A stretch of 64,000 nucleotides of DNA from assembly GCF_006345805.1 (NCBI RefSeq), contig NC_043009.1, forward strand, positions 44,268,001-44,332,000. Reading direction: 5' to 3'. The stretch is from Octopus sinensis. Taxonomy: Eukaryota. A program made the position numbers and the translations under genes. Under the pieces are notes generated by a model. It made no database searches. It was given only the letters and a program-made list of their open reading frames with translations, and was not told where the DNA came from. This document shows positions 9,206-56,423 of this stretch, piece after piece. Within the stretch, counting starts at the first letter, position 1. The number at the start of each line of letters is the position of its first letter.

Positions 9206-9498
9206 GTGCATGTTTTTTTTATTTAAGTTTGTTGTGATCAGTTCTTGGCTGTGATGTAGATTATTTGATGAATTTCTATGTTAATTTTTACATCATCTTT
9301 TGGCAATGGTGGCGCTGGGTGCAATAAAATAAAGTACCGGTGAAGTACAGGGTTGATGTAATTGACTTTCCTTGTCTCCTCACAAAATTGCTCAACTTGT
9401 GCCAAAATTAGAAACAATTATTTTTTTTTTTTATTCTTTTGTTTTGTTGTTTGTGTCTCTGTTTCAAGTATCAACTTCTCACTTGTTCTCTAATATAT

Positions 9499-9841
9499 AT
9501 AACATAAGGGACTAAAGCCATCTGAATATGGCTAGGAACAGGGCAGGGTGGTGGGGGTGTTACTGTTGCATTTAGCCCCAGGCGAACATCGACGTCGCTA
9601 GATAGGCTTGACACCGTCACGGTGTCCTTTAACCTGCAAAGGGAGATAATTCCCCGATGAAGCGGAAACCACACACGCTTCATCGGGGAATTATCTCCCT
9701 TTGCAGGTTAAAGGACACCGTGACGGTGTCAAGCCTATCTAGCGACGTCGATGTTCGCCTGGGGCTAAATGCAACAGTAATACTCCCACCACCCTGCCCT
9801 GTCCCTAGCCATATTCAGATGGCTTTAGTCCCTTATGTTAT
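9499..9841. repeat. Near-perfect fold-back inverted repeat, 166-bp arms, 11-nt spacer
   Basis: 9499-9664 is the reverse complement of 9676-9841 with 3 mismatches (9537/9803, 9556/9784, 9559/9781); spacer GAAACCACACA. Confidence 0.98.
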
Positions 9842-14322: not shown

Positions 14323-14725
14323 ACACTTTGCCCACCATGGGAGTTACCAGTGACCCCCAATGGTGATTTTTTTTTTTTGTTGTTTTCCATGGGGTCTCAC
14401 ATCACTGTAGTTCAAACCATATTATTTGAATTTTAGAAAATGTGCAAAAGACTTGTTTCTTTGTATTTTTAAATGGTTTCCTATTTGCATCAATAGTTGT
14501 GGTCAGGGATCAGGTTTGATATTGAAAGGGTGCAAGTCAGTCATTTTCCATCATTGGACTGCTGCCCCTCCATAAAATAAATTCTGTGAAAAAAATAGCC
14601 ATTAAATCTTATATAATCTGAAATATTATCTGTAGAAAAAAAAATCCATAAATGGAGATATGATGGACATTTTAACACTTTTTAACATGTATGTCACTGG
14701 TGACTCCCACAGTACAGAATGAATA
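14323..14725. mobile_element. Probable TTAA-type MITE with GGGAGTCACCAGTGAC subterminal inverted repeats
   Basis: Left TTAA|CACTTT...GGGAGTTACCAGTGAC; right GTCACTGGTGACTCCC...AGAATG; a further left-end copy follows at 14728-14760. Confidence 0.45.
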
Positions 14726-14818
14726 TAATATTCATTCTGTATTTTGGGAGTCACCAGTGAGAGCCATGCTATAAATCAAATTGGTAGTTTTACAGTGAAT
14801 TAGAGAACATATATATAT

Positions 14819-34261: not shown

Positions 34262-34619
34262 GTCATCTTAAGCTACAAAATATATATATATAAATAGATA
34301 AGACATGATGGTCACAGTTGGAATGCTTTTGTCAAGTCTTGTTCAATGAGAGACAATGTGGAGCTAATCAACAGCAAGAAAATTTATGGCACTCTGGGTC
34401 TGTTGCACTGTAAACTAATTTTCTTATTGGAAACTTGATTTAAGTCATCTTACATATAACATCAGCTACAAAAAAATAAATAAGGTATGATAGTCACGGT
34501 TGGAATGCTTTTGTCAGTAGGTCTTTTTCAATGAGAGCCAATAGGAAGCTAATCAACAAAAAAATTTATGGCACTCTGGATCTGTGGAACTGTTAACTAA
34601 TTTTCTTATTGGAAACTTG
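34262..34619 (+). repeat. Tandem duplication, ~180-bp units
   Basis: 34262-34437 and 34444-34619 share GTCATCTTA...TTGGAATGCTTTTGTCA...ATTTATGGCACTCTGG...TTCTTATTGGAAACTTG. Confidence 0.85.
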
Positions 34620-35180: not shown

Positions 35181-35213
<33 letters not shown>

Positions 35214-36230
35214 GTTTCAAATTTTGCCACAAGGACAGTCATGTTGGGGGAGGGGTTAAGTCGATTTCATCGACCTCAGTATTTCACTGGTACTTAATTT
35301 ATTGACTCCCAAAAGGATGAAAGGCATGATAATGACTTATTTATTTAAATAATAATAATAATCCTTTCTACTGAAAGCACAATGTCTAAAATTTGGTGGG
35401 AGGGGGCTAGTTGATTACATTGACCCCAGTGTTTCACTGGTACTTAATTTATCAACTTTGAAAAGATGAAAGGCAAAGTTGACCTTGATGGAATTTGAAC
35501 TCAGAACGTAGCGACAGGCAAAATACCACTGAGCATTTTGTCCAGCGTGCTAATGATTCTGCCAACTTGCTGCCTTTTGTATAATGATAATAATAATAAT
35601 AATGGTTTCAAATTTTGGCACAAGGCCAGCAAGTTTAGAGAAGGGAGTAGTAAGTCGATTACATTGATCCTAATGTTCAACTGGTACTTATTTTATTGGC
35701 CCTTAAAGGATGAAAGGTTGAGTTGACCTTGGCAGAACTTGAACTCAGAACATAAAAATGAATGAATTGCTGCTGAGTATTTTGCTTGGCATGATAATAA
35801 TTCTGCCAGCCTACCACCTTAATAAAAAAAATTAAAAAATAATAATAATAATGGTTTCTACTTGAGGCACTAGGCCAGCAGTTTTGAGACGAGGGATTTA
35901 ATCAATACCATCAGCCCAAGCACATGACTGGTACTTTATTTTATTGACCCTCAAAAGGATGCACAGCAAAAGTTGACTTTTGCAGAATTTGAAATCTCAA
36001 TTTGTTGGAAGAAATACTGGATAGTCTTTTGTCTGGTGGTCTAATGATTTCACCAGTCCATTCTCTAACATTGATGCACGGCCAGAAATCGGTTGGTGAG
36101 GAATAGTGGGTTTAAATCAACTTCGACTGGTTCTGTATTTTATTGATCCCAGAAAGGATGAAAGTCAAAGCTGACCTTGTTGGAATTTGAACTTGGGACA
36201 TGAACAGTTGCCAGAAATGCTGCTAAGCAT

Positions 36231-36646
36231 TTTACTCTTTTACTTGTTTCAGTCATTTGACTGTGGCCATGCTGGAGCACCGCCTTTTAGTCGAGCAAAT
36301 CGACTCCATGACATATTCTTTGTAAGCCTAGTACTTATTCTATTGGTCTCTTTTGCCGAACCGCTAAGTTACTGGGATGTAAACACACCAGCATCGGTTG
36401 TTAAGCGATGTTGGGAGGATAAACACAGACACACAAACACACACACACACACACACACATATATAAACATATACTTATATACGACGGGCTTCTTTCAGTT
36501 TCCATCTACCAAATCCACTCACAATGCTTTGGTTGACCTGAGGCCAAAGTAGAAGACACTTTGCCCAAGGTGCCACATAGTGGGACTGAACCCGGAACCA
36601 TGTAGTTGGTAAGCAAGCTACTTACCACACAGCCACTCCTGCGCCT
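36231..36646 (-). mobile_element. Full-length SINE-A nested in an array unit
   Basis: Host unit GCTAAGCAT|...|AATGTGCTAATG split by an element with intact CCACACAGCCACTCCTGCGCCT head. Confidence 0.92.
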
Positions 36647-37112
36647 ACAATGTGCTAATGAGTCTGCCAGCTTGCTGCCTTAATGATAATAATAATAATA
36701 ATAATAATCCCTTCTACTATAGGCACAGGGCCTGAAATTTTGGGGAGGGTGGATAGTTGATTACATTGATCCCAGTACTCAACTGCTACTTAATCTTATC
36801 TTAAACCCCCGGAGGATGAAAGGTAAAATTGTCCTCAGCAGAATTTGAACTCCGAGCATAAAGATGGATGAAATGCTGTTAAGCACTTTGTCCAATGTGC
36901 TAACAGTTCTGCCAGTTTGTTGCCTTAACAGCAATAACAATAATAATGGTTTTAAATTTGGGCACAAGGCCAATAATTGTTGGAGAGGATGCATGTTGAT
37001 TACATTGACCCCCAGTGCTCAACTGGTATTCATTCTATTGACTCGAAAGCATGAAAGGCAAAGTCAACCTCAGCAGCATTTGAACTCAGAACATAAAGAC
37101 AGATGTAATACC

Positions 37113-37331
37113 TATTTCTTTATTACCCACAAGGGGCTAAACACAGAGGGGACAAACAAGGAAAGACATAGGTATTAAGTTGATTACATCGACCCCCAGT
37201 GCGTAACTGGTACTTAATTTATCGACCCCGAAAGGATGAAAGGCAAAGTCGACCTCGGCGGAATTTGAACTCACAACGTAATGCAGACGAAATACCGCTA
37301 AGCATTTCGCCCGGCGTGCTAATGTTTCTGC
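37113..37331 (-). mobile_element. Young CpG-rich SINE-B variant with 13-bp TSD
   Basis: TSD CAGATGTAATACC at 37100-37112 and 37332-37344; many intact CpGs. Confidence 0.88.
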
Positions 37332-37837
37332 CAGATGTAATACCGCTAAGCCTTTTGTCTGATGCACTAATCATTCTGCCAGCTTGCCGCTGTTAATAAT
37401 AATAATAATGATGATGATGATGATTTCGAATTTTTGCCACAAAGGCAGCTTGGGGGAGGGGGGATTAAGTCGATTGCATCAACCCCAGTGCGTACTTATT
37501 TAATCGAGCCTGAAAGGATGATCGGCAAAGTTGACCTTGGCAGAATTTCAACTCAGAACATAATGATGGATGAAATACTGCTAAGCATTTTGCCCAGTAT
37601 GCTAACAATTCTTCCAGCTTGCTGCCATTCTGATAACTATAATTAATTCTGACAAAGCCTGAAAATTACTGGGAGGTAAACGACTGTATTGACCTCATTA
37701 CTTGACTGGTACTTCATCAACCCCAGATAGATGAAAGCAGAAGTTGAACTCAGAACATAAAAAAAGTCAGAGCAAGTACAGCAGGATGCTTTTAGAATTC
37801 TGTCAAATCAACCAGTGTTATGTAATAATTATAATCT

Positions 37838-38070
37838 AAGGTGGCAAGCTGCCAGAACTGTTAGCATGCTGGGCAAAATGCTTCGCAGTATTTCATCTGT
37901 CTCTACATTCTTCCGCCAAAGTCGACTTTGCTTTTCATCCTTTCAGGGTCGATAAATTAAGTACCAGTTGCCTACTGAGGTTGATCTAATTGACTAGCCC
38001 TCTCCCCCACACACTCCCAAAAAATTTCAGGCCTTTTGCCTAGAGTAGAAAAGAATAATAATAATAATAA
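37838..38070 (+). mobile_element. SINE-B, opposite orientation to the array
   Basis: AAGGTGGCAAGCTGCCAGAA head, GTAGAAAAGAATAATAAT tail. Confidence 0.8.
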
Positions 38071-38899
38071 TAATCTAGTAGAAAAAGAAATATATTATGC
38101 AAAAACATTGCAAGAAAGTAATAAAATATTGTGCTGCAGTATAATTGCACTGTAATTTACATTTGTACTATTTTCCATCTCTCTTTGCTTCCTTGTAATG
38201 CTGGTTACAGCGTTTTGTTGGTAGAGAAGTTTTGGCATTAATTGTGGCGTTTTACAAATAATTTTCCACCTAATTTGTTTCGCATTATTAATAGACAATA
38301 CATGATTGCAATTTATTTCCCGTATTACAGCATTTGCTGGAGACCTGTTTCTGTTTTTTTCCTTTTTTTCCGTTTTTTTTTTTAGTTTTTGTTTACTTTT
38401 TGGTAATTATTTTCTGTTTGATAATTAAAATATTTTATGCTTGCTATGGCTTTGAGCATATGCGTGTATGTGCTTTAGTGTCTGTGTATATGCAAAATAA
38501 GGTAGTCTCGTATGTGTGTGTGTGTGTGTAATGTTTGCATGGGTGCACCGATCAGGCAGGCTTAGAATGAATACCCACCATTTATGTGTTTATGGTTGGT
38601 GTTTTGCTGTTGCTGCTACTACTACTGTGGATTGCCTGAATCATTAGTATTAGAAAATATGCTATGCAATATTTATTCTTGCTCTTTACATTCTGAGTTC
38701 AAATCCAGGTCATCGAGGTCAATAGTGTCTTTCATCGTCAGCAAAATAAAGTCTCAGTTTAGGGGTTAATTAAATCAACTTTTCCCTTCTCTAAAGCACT
38801 CTGGCCCTGTGTGGTCACTGCTGTTGCTAAATCCATTTATTGCAGAGAAGTGCGCTGATAGCCTGCTCCTCTCGGTCATTGATTCATCAAGAATATTAA

Positions 38900-46424: not shown

Positions 46425-46808
46425 GGATGGAAGCACTCCGTCGGTTACGACGATGAGGGTTCTTGGTTGATCCGAATAAACGGAACAGCCTGCTCGTGAA
46501 ATTAATGTGTAAGTGGCTGAGCACTCCACAGACACGTGTACCCTTAACGTAGTTCTCGGGGATATTCAGCATGACACAGAGTGTGACAAGGCTGGCCCTT
46601 TGAAATACAGGTACAACAGAAACAGGAAGTAAGAGTGAGAGAAAGTTGTGGTGAAAGAGTACAGCAGGGATCACACCATCCCTGCCGAGAGCCTCGTGGA
46701 GCTTTAGTGTTTCGCTCTAAAACACTCACAACGCCCGGTCTGGGAATCGAAGCCGCGATCCTTGACCGCGAGTCCGCTGCCCTAACCACTGGGCCATTGC
46801 GCCTCCAC
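46425..46808 (-). mobile_element. Young tRNA(Arg)-like SINE family F with 11-bp TSD
   Basis: Head GTGGAGGCGCAATGGCCCAGTGGTTAGGGCAGCGGACTCGCGG..GCTTCGATTCC (A and B boxes); TSD TTATAAGTAAT at 46414-46424 and 46809-46819; CpGs intact. Confidence 0.93.
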
Positions 46809-47081
46809 TTATAAGTAATAATATCTTAGAGAGAGAAAGTGAGTGTGTGTGTATGTGTGTAATGAATAGTAGTTTGTGGAGGAAAAATTAAATCCTTTTA
46901 TTTAAGTAATGACTGAACTTTTTAAAATATTCTCTAACCTGTAATTGTATATGACACATTCTTCTTTGTAATCATAACATTGTCATCATAACCTCCATTG
47001 TGTCAAGGTTATCACAACAAATAATAATTATTACCTTTGTCTGTGTGTCAGTCTCATTGCCGTAAATGTTATTTACTGTTC

Positions 47082-47381
47082 GGTGGCTTAGTGCTTAAGG
47101 TATTCTGCTCACGATCATAAGGCCATGAGTTTGAATCCTGGTTTCACATTGTGTCCTTGAGCAAGACACTTGACTTCACATTGCTCCAGCCCACTCAGCT
47201 GACAAAAATGAGTACTACCTGTATTTCAAAGGGCCAGCCTTGTCACATTCTGTGTCTCACTGAATCTGAGAACTAACATTACGGATACACATCTCTGGAG
47301 TGGTCAGTTAATTTCACGAGCAGGGTGTTTTGTTGACCGGGTCAACTGGAACACTAGTCATTGTAACCGATAGAATGTCAG
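47082..47381 (+). mobile_element. SINE family G (H-type head and core, F-type 3' half)
   Basis: GTGTCCTTGAGCAAGACACTT CORE-like box; CCTGTATTTCAAAGGGCCAGCCTTGTCAC...TTAATTTCACGAGCAGG shared with family F. Confidence 0.8.
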
Positions 47382-49802: not shown

Positions 49803-50150
49803 CGCAGACACAGCTGTGTGGCTAAGAAGCTTGCTTTGCAACCACATGGTTTCAGATTCAGTTCCCCTGAGCAGAACCTTGTACAAGTGTTTTTCTACTC
49901 TAGCCCCAGGCCAACCAAAGCCTTTTGAGTGAATTTGGTAGAAGGAATCTGTATGGAAGCCTATCATTTGTGTTTCTAGCCAGCCACTGCTTGACAACTA
50001 GTGTTGGTCTGTTTATGTCCCTGTAACTTAGTGGTTTGACAAAAAAGACTGGTAGAATAAGTACCAGACTTTAAAAAATAAGTATTGGGTTTGATTTGTT
50101 TGACTGAATCCTTCAAGGTAGCACCCCTGCATGACTGCAACTGGAAATCA
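49803..50150 (+). mobile_element. SINE family A
   Basis: GCTGTGTGGCTAAGAAGCTTGCTTTGCAACCACATGG head; GAATAAGTACCAG tail. Confidence 0.8.
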
Positions 50151-55989: not shown

Positions 55990-56423
55990 TGAACACTTAG
56001 GGGCAGCTTTTTGTCAGGAGATGGGAGTAAAAGTGTGAGTGAAGGGGGTCAGAGCATAACAGGTTGCTTGTTGTGGAGAAACTACATGAGTACTCACATT
56101 TTAAAGGAGAGGGTTGGAGTGACTGGGTGGAACTGGAAAAAGATAAAAGTAGTGGTGACAAGGTGCCAGGGTGGACCCACAAGGTACAAGTTGAGTAGAA
56201 ATGAGAGAGTCGGAGAGACAAGGGGAGTGAGTGGATGGATATTGCCAGAGATAATGGAAGGAGTGAGAAATGAGAAGTTGGTATGGGAGGAGGTTGGAGA
56301 TTATTGTAAAGATTGGGTGGAGGAGGAGGGCTGATGTAGTGAATGGTGGACTACCAATGATACACAAAATGGGGAGGATGGGAAGGGGAGTAGGGAATGA
56401 CTAAATGGTAATACGGCAGGCAG

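What the first reader, a model, noticed from the sequence alone, without database searches (positions are those of the whole stretch)
9499..9841. 343-bp near-perfect fold-back: 166-bp dsRNA/cruciform stem with nested mini-hairpins
Seen: the arms differ at only 3 of 166 positions, all in the outer part, and the inner 105 bp are identical. Each arm has 8 intact CpGs in its inner half, unusual for this window. Each arm also contains internal palindromes (GACACCG-TCA-CGGTGTC, CGACGTCG, AGCCAT-CTGAAT-ATGGCT). As + strand RNA, two mismatches are G.U wobbles and one is an A.C pair. Established: long dsRNA is an ADAR and Dicer substrate, A opposite C is a favoured editing site, and coleoids edit heavily. 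Inference: either a fold-back MITE (TA|ACATAAGGG...CCCTTATGT|TA fits a TA target) or a snap-back inverted duplication of a retroelement tail. TTTAGCCCCAGG in the arm and ATCGAGCAG in the right flank resemble my recollection of the SINE-D tail. If transcribed it could be a hairpin-RNA/endo-siRNA or hyper-editing locus.
Basis: partly seen in the sequence, partly recalled or inferred. Interest (0 to 1): 0.8.

Follow-up and report, generated by a model that had tools for sequence, protein, structure and literature searches.

The report
Young palindromic transposon-like hairpin insertion
A real, recently formed 343-bp DNA palindrome sits in repeat-rich non-coding animal DNA; it most likely is a fold-back miniature transposon of a well-known kind that would form a long RNA hairpin if transcribed, and nothing here shows it is more than that.

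Summary
Arms 9499-9664 and 9676-9841 are 166 nt with 3 transition mismatches and an 11-nt loop. The RNA fold is -344.7 kcal/mol (z = -47.7). Each arm has 8 CpG.

The element is foreign to its surroundings: GC 0.51 and CpG o/e 0.73, against flanks of 0.29-0.36 and 0.14-0.27. It is young (arm distance 0.018). Its ends allow only a TA (or AT) duplication and no longer one.

The best reading is a whole-element palindromic ("fold-back") MITE of the TA-target type, like C. elegans PALTA, human Made1 or the Xenopus palindromic Harbinger MITE. If transcribed it would be an ADAR hyper-editing substrate.

This is not proven. The arm has no second copy in the 64-kb window, and a positive control showed that the public collections I could search do not cover this genome. 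Copy number, an empty site and expression are therefore untestable here.

The nested hairpins are barely above chance. The endo-siRNA idea is weakened by evidence that molluscs lack an siRNA pathway.

One curiosity remains: the outer 82 nt of each arm carry no CpG and all 3 mismatches, and the inner 84 nt carry all CpGs and no mismatch.

Interest is low to moderate.

The parts
9499..9664 (+). Left arm of the inverted repeat (166 nt). The outer 82 nt have no CpG. The inner 84 nt have 8 CpG.
9665..9675 (+). Unpaired 11-nt spacer/loop, GAAACCACACA.
9676..9841 (+). Right arm, the reverse complement of the left arm except at 9781, 9784 and 9803.
9502..9838 (.). Element proper if TA is the target-site duplication (337 bp, ends ACATAAGGGA...TCCCTTATGT).
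   Evidence: TA or AT are the only possible duplications; the terminal 18-mer occurs nowhere else in the window.
9500..9501 (.). Left TA, either the putative target-site duplication or simply part of the palindrome. It lies at the end of a short (TA)n run.
9839..9840 (.). Right TA (putative target-site duplication).
9610..9626 (.). Perfect 17-bp palindrome GACACCGTCACGGTGTC inside the left arm. Its mirror copy is at 9714-9730.
9714..9730 (.). Mirror copy of the 17-bp palindrome in the right arm.
9537..9559 (.). The three mismatched positions of the left arm (9537, 9556, 9559), which pair with 9803, 9784 and 9781.

Best explanation
This is a recent insertion of a non-autonomous, whole-element palindromic ('fold-back') DNA transposon, that is, a MITE whose two long terminal inverted repeats meet at an 11-nt spacer. 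It inserted at a TA at the edge of a (TA)n run, as Tc1/mariner-type (Stowaway/PALTA-like) elements do. Such elements are thought to arise when gap repair after excision switches template between the two ends of a parent transposon. They are then moved in trans by a transposase encoded elsewhere. The element encodes nothing. Its likely consequence for the host is passive: if a passing transcript (for example an intron or UTR) includes it, either strand folds into a 166-bp, nearly perfect dsRNA with a short loop, which is the preferred substrate for promiscuous ADAR hyper-editing. Shown here: the structure, the sharp ends, the foreign and young composition, the absence of coding capacity, and the absence of any longer duplication. 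Inferred: transposon identity, TA targeting, mobilisation in trans, transcription and editing.
For: The 166-nt arms are 98% complementary and complementarity stops abruptly at both ends. The only possible flanking duplication is TA or AT; no direct repeat of 3-15 nt fits at any trimming, which argues against retrotransposition and most non-TA superfamilies. The insertion point is the end of a TA run and the joined flanks read ...CTCTAATATATATA|TCGAGCAG.... The element has GC 0.507 and CpG o/e 0.73, while 500-bp and 2-kb flanks have GC 0.29-0.36 and CpG o/e 0.14-0.27 and the whole window has CpG o/e 0.26. This points to a unit that arrived recently. The arm-to-arm JC distance is 0.018. With the octopus calibration in PMC13282606 (JC 0.065 at about 18 My), this is of the order of 2-3 My if that rate applies. 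There is no Pfam domain, no protein homologue and no Rfam family at gathering score. By far the longest close-spaced inverted repeat in the window is this one, but a second, older whole-element palindrome exists at 14679-14775, so such elements recur in this genome. Literature precedents include whole-element fold-back MITEs (PALTA1/2/4_CE, PALTTAA, Mirza, Hairpin) and the template-switch model for their birth (PMC3814204). Others are Made1, with two 37-bp TIRs plus 6 bp (PMC1784062), and the palindromic ~200-bp Harbinger MITE that is the most hyper-edited repeat in Xenopus (PMC5625713). Tc1-mariner elements and MITEs are among the recently active insertions in O. vulgaris (PMC13282606).
Against: I found no second copy of the arm or of its terminal 18-mer in the 64-kb window, and multi-copy status is a defining property of a MITE. 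The TA is self-complementary, so it cannot be distinguished from the last pairs of the palindrome. The termini (ACATAAGGG) do not resemble the termini I recall for Tc1, mariner or pogo elements (CAGT or TTAGG types; my own knowledge, not tested). No internal direct repeats of the IR/DR type occur in the arm. No autonomous partner or transposase remnant is present in the window. The arm's bipartite pattern (outer part CpG-free with all mismatches, inner part CpG-rich and perfect) is not predicted by a simple one-step insertion.
Confidence: 0.55

Rival explanations
1. This is a local inverted duplication. One arm was already there, for instance as a fragment of a young, GC-rich repeat. A replication or repair template switch (snap-back or intra- or inter-strand switch) then copied it in reverse complement next to itself, giving a single-copy palindrome.
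For: The arm has no other copy in the window. Template switching is a documented one-step source of perfect inverted repeats and can turn quasi-palindromes into perfect ones (PMC10710096). All three mismatches lie in the outer 61 nt and the inner 105 nt are perfect: P = 0.05 under uniform mutation, and 0.008 if CpG sites mutate ten times faster. This is what centre-proximal re-copying of one arm from the other would give. TA at the ends carries no weight because it is self-complementary.
Against: The arms are 166 nt, whereas the template-switch hairpins screened in PMC10710096 had stems of 30-55 nt. Both arms together form one compositionally foreign block with sharp ends on both sides. That is natural for an insertion but needs a coincidence if copying stopped at an arbitrary point. 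The mechanism also overlaps with the way fold-back MITEs are born (PMC3814204), so it may describe the origin of the family and not of this locus.
Confidence: 0.25
2. This is an assembly or sequencing artefact, from a chimeric fold-back read or a missed hairpin adapter.
For: Palindromes are a known artefact class in long-read and amplified libraries. No reads are available to me.
Against: The right flank is not the reverse complement of the left flank (2 of 14 positions pair), so the sequence does not simply fold back on itself. The palindrome is embedded in unique sequence on both sides. The arms differ by three transitions, which an in-vitro snap-back copy would not show. There is no similarity to plasmid/vector or phage records.
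Confidence: 0.05
3. This is a host gene for a structured RNA, such as a long hairpin RNA, endo-siRNA or miRNA-like precursor, or a dedicated ADAR substrate. On this reading the perfect inner stem is kept by selection.
For: The stem is extremely stable on either strand. The inner 105 bp are perfect with all 16 CpGs intact. There is no TTTT or AATAAA inside on either strand that would terminate transcription. Palindromic MITEs have given rise to miRNA genes (PMC1784062).
Against: All Rfam matches are generic hairpin matches far below gathering score, the best being 75 bits against 128. A 166-bp perfect stem is not a Drosha/Dicer miRNA precursor shape (about 35 bp; PMC10710096). Molluscs appear to lack a dedicated siRNA pathway (PMC12479628). 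No conservation or expression evidence could be obtained. Youth alone explains the perfection.
Confidence: 0.07
4. This derives from a retroelement: an inverted dimer of a SINE or LINE tail, or a Penelope-like tail-to-tail arrangement.
For: The window is packed with SINE-like repeats, and a SINE fragment ends 50 bp upstream, at 9317-9448. Weak motif similarity occurs at 49899-49915.
Against: The arm shows no significant similarity to any repeat in the window (best chance-level hits are 13-23 nt). The motif counts are at or near chance. There is no poly-A or simple-repeat tail and no target-site duplication longer than 2 nt. There is no hammerhead or any other Rfam match.
Confidence: 0.06

Closest known systems
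Whole-element palindromic TA-target MITEs (C. elegans PALTA1/2/4_CE, Mirza; Stowaway-like Tc1/mariner derivatives), as listed in PMC3814204
   Same: The entire element is one fold-back. It is a few hundred bp long, has no coding capacity, and has TA at both ends. It lies in AT-rich target DNA.
   Different: No family members or autonomous partner were found. The termini are not recognisably Tc1/mariner-like. TA cannot be proven to be a duplication.
Xenopus tropicalis palindromic ~200-bp Harbinger MITE (PMC5625713)
   Same: It is a self-folding repeat that forms a tight dsRNA with a short loop. This gives the functional analogy, because such elements are the most heavily ADAR-hyper-edited repeats.
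   Different: Harbinger elements make 3-bp TWA duplications. Here TAA on the left faces TTA on the right, which is palindromic and not direct, so that superfamily does not fit. Editing was not tested.
Human Made1 MITE / hsa-mir-548 (PMC1784062)
   Same: It is a mariner-derived near-perfect palindrome with two TIRs and a few bp of spacer. Either strand folds into a hairpin.
   Different: Made1 is 80 bp, with 37-bp arms of miRNA-precursor size. This stem is 166 bp, far too long for canonical miRNA processing.
Template-switch-generated hairpins (PMC10710096)
   Same: They form a near-perfect inverted repeat with a short loop in one step, and centre-proximal perfection is expected.
   Different: The documented stems are tens of nt long and are made from local sequence. 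Here the arms are 166 nt and are compositionally foreign to the flanks.

Membership tests
Fold-back / palindromic MITE (TA-target, Tc1/mariner-type) | Terminal inverted repeats at both ends | tested here: met
   The 166-nt arms are 98% complementary.
Fold-back / palindromic MITE (TA-target, Tc1/mariner-type) | Small size and no coding capacity | tested here: met
   The element is 343 bp. The arm-encoded frame has no homologue and the window has no Pfam domain.
Fold-back / palindromic MITE (TA-target, Tc1/mariner-type) | TA target-site duplication | tested here: inconclusive
   TA is present at 9500-9501 and 9839-9840 and no longer duplication is possible. But TA is self-complementary and cannot be told apart from the end of the palindrome.
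Fold-back / palindromic MITE (TA-target, Tc1/mariner-type) | Multiple dispersed copies with different flanks | not testable with these tools
   There is no second copy in the 64-kb window. Public collections gave 0 hits, but a positive control with the window's own abundant SINE frame also found nothing, so those collections do not cover this genome.
Fold-back / palindromic MITE (TA-target, Tc1/mariner-type) | Termini shared with an autonomous transposon of the superfamily | not testable with these tools
   No element in the window shares the terminal 18-mer, and no transposase remnant was found. A genome-wide search is needed.
Template-switch / snap-back inverted duplication | Ancestral or allelic state with one arm only | not testable with these tools
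   No orthologous or allelic sequence is available. No paralogous empty site exists in the window.
Template-switch / snap-back inverted duplication | Arms made of local sequence (same composition as flanks) | tested here: not met
   The element has GC 0.51 and CpG o/e 0.73. The flanks have GC 0.29-0.36 and CpG o/e 0.14-0.27.
miRNA precursor (any Rfam family) | Score at or above the family's gathering threshold | tested here: not met
   The best match is MIR1883 at 75.4 bits against 128. All the others are also below threshold.
hpRNA / endo-siRNA locus | 21-23-nt Dicer products from the stem and a host siRNA pathway | not testable with these tools
   No small-RNA data are available. The literature reports no siDicer/siAgo and no endo-siRNA signature in molluscs, including O. 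bimaculoides (PMC12479628).
   blastn with word size 7 gives only 13-23-nt chance-level hits. The motif counts are at or near chance.
   No duplication longer than 2 nt fits at any trimming, and no tail is visible in the sequence.

The most novel reading that the evidence does not exclude
The hairpin could be a single-copy, lineage-specific structure that is transcribed and kept perfect in its inner 105 bp, either by selection or by centre-proximal arm-to-arm correction. In that case it would act as a dedicated long dsRNA, for example an ADAR-binding or hyper-editing 'sponge' or an unconventional small-RNA precursor, in an animal thought to lack an siRNA pathway. The bipartite arm (outer part CpG-free and diverging, inner part CpG-rich and perfect) would then mark a maintained, unmethylated functional core.
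Probability: 0.06. Interest if true: 0.6.

Novelty: new member of a known kind. Interest (0 to 1): 0.25.

Why it matters
If this is a young fold-back MITE, it is a marker of recent DNA-transposon activity in this genome. It is also one more source of long, perfect dsRNA, the class of structure that governs how much ADAR hyper-editing a species shows (PMC5625713). That would be useful for annotation, but it would not be a surprise. It would matter more only if it proved to be single-copy, transcribed and maintained.

Tried and rejected
- **Other copies via proteins.** The arm-encoded 62-aa frame had no homologue among 5.8 billion proteins. An exhaustive HMMER run against 1.84 billion representatives gave one spurious repetitive bacterial protein. 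The exact look-up of 10 window ORFs found none.
- **Other copies via DNA.** Three different 22-23-mers of the arm gave 0 hits in the metagenome, prokaryote-genome and viral collections. The bare 17-mer palindrome gave 15 viral contigs, none extending beyond 17-22 nt, so these are chance matches. Plasmid and phage BLAST gave no match.
- **Positive control.** A frame from the window's abundant SINE-like repeat also finds nothing, so all these negatives say nothing about copy number in the source genome.
- **Empty site inside the window.** No paralogue spans the joined flanks.
- **Gene or organism anchor.** I found no tRNA, no Rfam family, no Pfam domain in frames of 85 aa or more, and no credible exon candidate. 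The organism remains unverified.
- **Supplement of the octopus repeat paper.** It holds no sequence library.
- **IR/DR architecture of long-TIR Tc1 elements.** The arm has no internal direct repeats.
- **Harbinger (TWA), piggyBac/Kolobok (TTAA), hAT (8 bp) and Helitron (A|T, TC...CTRR).** The ends do not fit any of these.
- **Hammerhead or Penelope tail.** CCGATGA...GAAAC near the loop is not a canonical core, and there is no Rfam hit.
- **Parvovirus-like terminal hairpin.** I considered this from memory. No adjacent coding sequence of any kind is present.
- **G-quadruplex.** Inspection of the G-rich outer arm shows only three G3 runs.

Full report
**1. The observation**

The repeat finder reports arms 9499-9664 and 9676-9841, 166 nt each and 98% complementary, separated by 11 nt.

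A base-by-base comparison gives three differences, all transitions, at arm positions 39, 58 and 61: 9537/9803, 9556/9784 and 9559/9781. The inner 105 nt are identical, and the loop is GAAACCACACA.

Beyond the arms complementarity collapses, with only 2 of the next 14 positions pairing. As RNA the + strand folds into one uninterrupted stem of -344.7 kcal/mol, against -105.2 +/- 5.0 for dinucleotide shuffles (z = -47.7). On the + strand the mismatches are A.C, G.U and G.U. On the - strand they are G.U, A.C and A.C.

Each arm has 8 CpG. Only 0.4% of other 343-bp windows in the 64 kb reach 16 CpG.

The internal palindromes exist but are a minor feature:
- The perfect 17-mer GACACCGT-C-ACGGTGTC is modestly unusual (P about 0.014).
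- A single arm as DNA folds no better than shuffles (z = -0.99).

**2. Context**

The window is AT-rich (GC about 0.31-0.42 per 2 kb) and strongly CpG-depleted (o/e 0.26). It is full of microsatellites and interspersed repeats. It contains:
- no tRNA;
- no Rfam family at gathering score;
- no Pfam domain in any frame of 85 aa or more;
- no credible exon candidate.

It is non-coding animal-type DNA.

A SINE-like fragment ends 50 bp upstream of the hairpin, at 9317-9448. The hairpin is by far the longest close-spaced inverted repeat in the window. The next is an unrelated, older ~97-bp palindrome at 14679-14775, which is 85% complementary.

**3. What the sequence itself says about origin**

- *Composition.* The element has GC 0.507 and CpG o/e 0.73. 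Its 500-bp and 2-kb flanks have GC 0.29-0.36 and CpG o/e 0.14-0.27. Both arms together therefore form one foreign block that has not been in a CpG-eroding genome for long.
- *Age.* The arm-to-arm JC distance is 0.018. With the octopus calibration of PMC13282606 (JC 0.065 at about 18 My, 0.09 at about 25 My), this is of the order of 2-3 My. This is an inference and is valid only if that rate applies.
- *Ends.* I tested every symmetric and asymmetric trimming of the ends against every duplication length from 2 to 15 nt. Only TA (element 9502-9838) or AT fit, and nothing longer does.
  - This argues against target-primed retrotransposition and against superfamilies with 3-9-bp duplications.
  - It fits TA-targeting Tc1/mariner-type elements.
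  - The left junction lies at the end of a (TA)n run, and the joined flanks read ...CTCTAATATATATA|TCGAGCAG....
- *Caveat on TA.* TA is its own reverse complement, so it would look the same if it were simply the last two pairs of the palindrome. It is consistent with a duplication but does not prove one.
- *Copies and architecture.* The terminal 18-mer and the arm as a whole occur nowhere else in the window. The arm has no internal direct repeats of the IR/DR type.

**4. An unexplained detail**

The arm is bipartite:

| Part of arm | CpG | Mismatches |
|---|---|---|
| Outer 82 nt | 0 | all 3 |
| Inner 84 nt | 8 (o/e 1.33) | 0 |

The chance that all three differences fall in the outer 61 nt is 0.05 under uniform mutation, and 0.008 if CpG sites mutate ten times faster. 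Three explanations are possible:
- chance;
- a family consensus whose arms are not perfectly complementary near the ends;
- centre-proximal re-copying of one arm from the other by template switching, the classical route from quasi-palindrome to perfect palindrome (PMC10710096).

I cannot decide between these.

**5. Search for relatives**

- The arm-encoded frame has no homologue in the 5.8-billion protein collection. In an exhaustive HMMER scan of 1.84 billion representatives it has only one spurious hit, a repetitive bacterial-type protein.
- Three arm 22-23-mers are absent from the metagenome, prokaryote-genome and viral collections.
- The bare 17-mer gives only chance hits.
- Plasmid and phage BLAST give nothing, which also removes a vector or contaminant origin.
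- A positive control failed. A frame from the window's own abundant SINE-like repeat also has no relative, and none of ten window ORFs is in the collection.

These resources simply do not cover the source genome. The key question, whether the element is multi-copy or single-copy, is therefore untestable here.

**6.

- *SINE-tail resemblance: not supported.* The arm shows no significant similarity to any repeat in the window. TTTAGCCCCAGG-like motifs occur 11 times against 3.6 expected, with 2 of 100 shuffles as high. The flank motif occurs 6 times against 3.9.
- *miRNA-precursor models: generic hairpin matches only.* The best Rfam match is 75 bits against a gathering score of 128.
- *ADAR hyper-editing: plausible by direct precedent.* In Xenopus a palindromic ~200-bp Harbinger MITE folds on itself and is the most edited repeat, with 65 of 77 adenosines edited in one copy. 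O. bimaculoides shows the strongest hyper-editing signal of 19 metazoans (PMC5625713). Nothing here shows that this locus is transcribed.
- *Endo-siRNA reading: weakened.* A mollusc-wide survey including O. bimaculoides found no siRNA-type Dicer or Ago and no endo-siRNA signature. It suggested editing as the fate of long dsRNA (PMC12479628).

**7. Explanation and rivals**

| Explanation | Confidence |
|---|---|
| Young whole-element palindromic (fold-back) MITE of the TA-target type | about 0.55 |
| Local inverted duplication by template switching | about 0.25 |
| Functional RNA gene | about 0.07 |
| Retroelement-tail dimer | about 0.06 |
| Assembly artefact | about 0.05 |

*Best explanation.* Such families are well known: PALTA1/2/4_CE, PALTTAA, Mirza and Hairpin, as listed in PMC3814204, and Made1 (PMC1784062). 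PMC3814204 gives a model for their birth, in which template switching occurs between the two transposon ends during gap repair. Tc1-mariner elements and MITEs are among the recently active insertions in O. vulgaris (PMC13282606).

*Local inverted duplication.* It is favoured by the lack of other copies in the window and by the centre-perfect pattern. It is disfavoured by the size (166 nt against the 30-55-nt stems screened in PMC10710096) and by the fact that both arms form one foreign block with sharp ends.

*Assembly artefact.* It is unlikely because the flanks are not mutually complementary, the palindrome is embedded in unique sequence, and the arms differ by three transitions.

*Retroelement-tail dimer.* It lacks sequence similarity, a tail and a long duplication.

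*Functional RNA gene.* It is not excluded but has no positive evidence.

**8. Verdict**

It is most probably an ordinary member of a known kind of mobile element, with a generic potential to form dsRNA. Section 4 describes the only slightly odd detail, the bipartite arm. One BLAST of the arm against the source genome and one look at the orthologous site would settle the origin. RNA-seq and small-RNA mapping would settle function.

Noticed in passing
window 14679-14775: A second, unrelated whole-element palindrome with 48-nt arms, 85% complementary and a 1-nt spacer. It is probably an older, decayed fold-back MITE-like element.
   Followed up: partly
window 46441-47265: This is the CpG-richest patch of the window (20 CpG per 343 bp, GC 0.51, o/e 0.9). 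It has 50-nt inverted repeats, 92% complementary, 602 nt apart (46564-46613 / 47216-47265). It could be a young TIR element or two inverted tRNA-like SINE copies, and would be another potential dsRNA former.
   Followed up: no
window 36100-38100: A cluster of multi-copy repeats (self-similarity depth up to 12) with CpG o/e about 1.1. It includes a 48-bp tandem at 37284-37382 and several 54-70-nt inverted repeats. This shows that young CpG-rich repeats are not unique to the hairpin.
   Followed up: no
window 9499-9664 (each arm): The arm is bipartite. The outer 82 nt have 0 CpG and carry all 3 arm differences. The inner 84 nt have 8 CpG (o/e 1.33) and no difference. P is 0.05 to 0.008 depending on the CpG mutation model. 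This remains unexplained.
   Followed up: partly
window 55993-56400: A strand-asymmetric G/purine-rich tract (GC skew 0.23 for 56-58 kb) that is open in several frames on both strands. It is low-complexity sequence and not an exon.
   Followed up: no
window 34292-34619: A 182-bp unit present in 1.8 tandem copies at 86% identity.
   Followed up: no
window 9317-9448: A fragment of a SINE-like repeat, 73-75% identical to copies at 35198-35950, ending in a T-run 50 bp upstream of the hairpin. The hairpin did not insert into it.
   Followed up: yes
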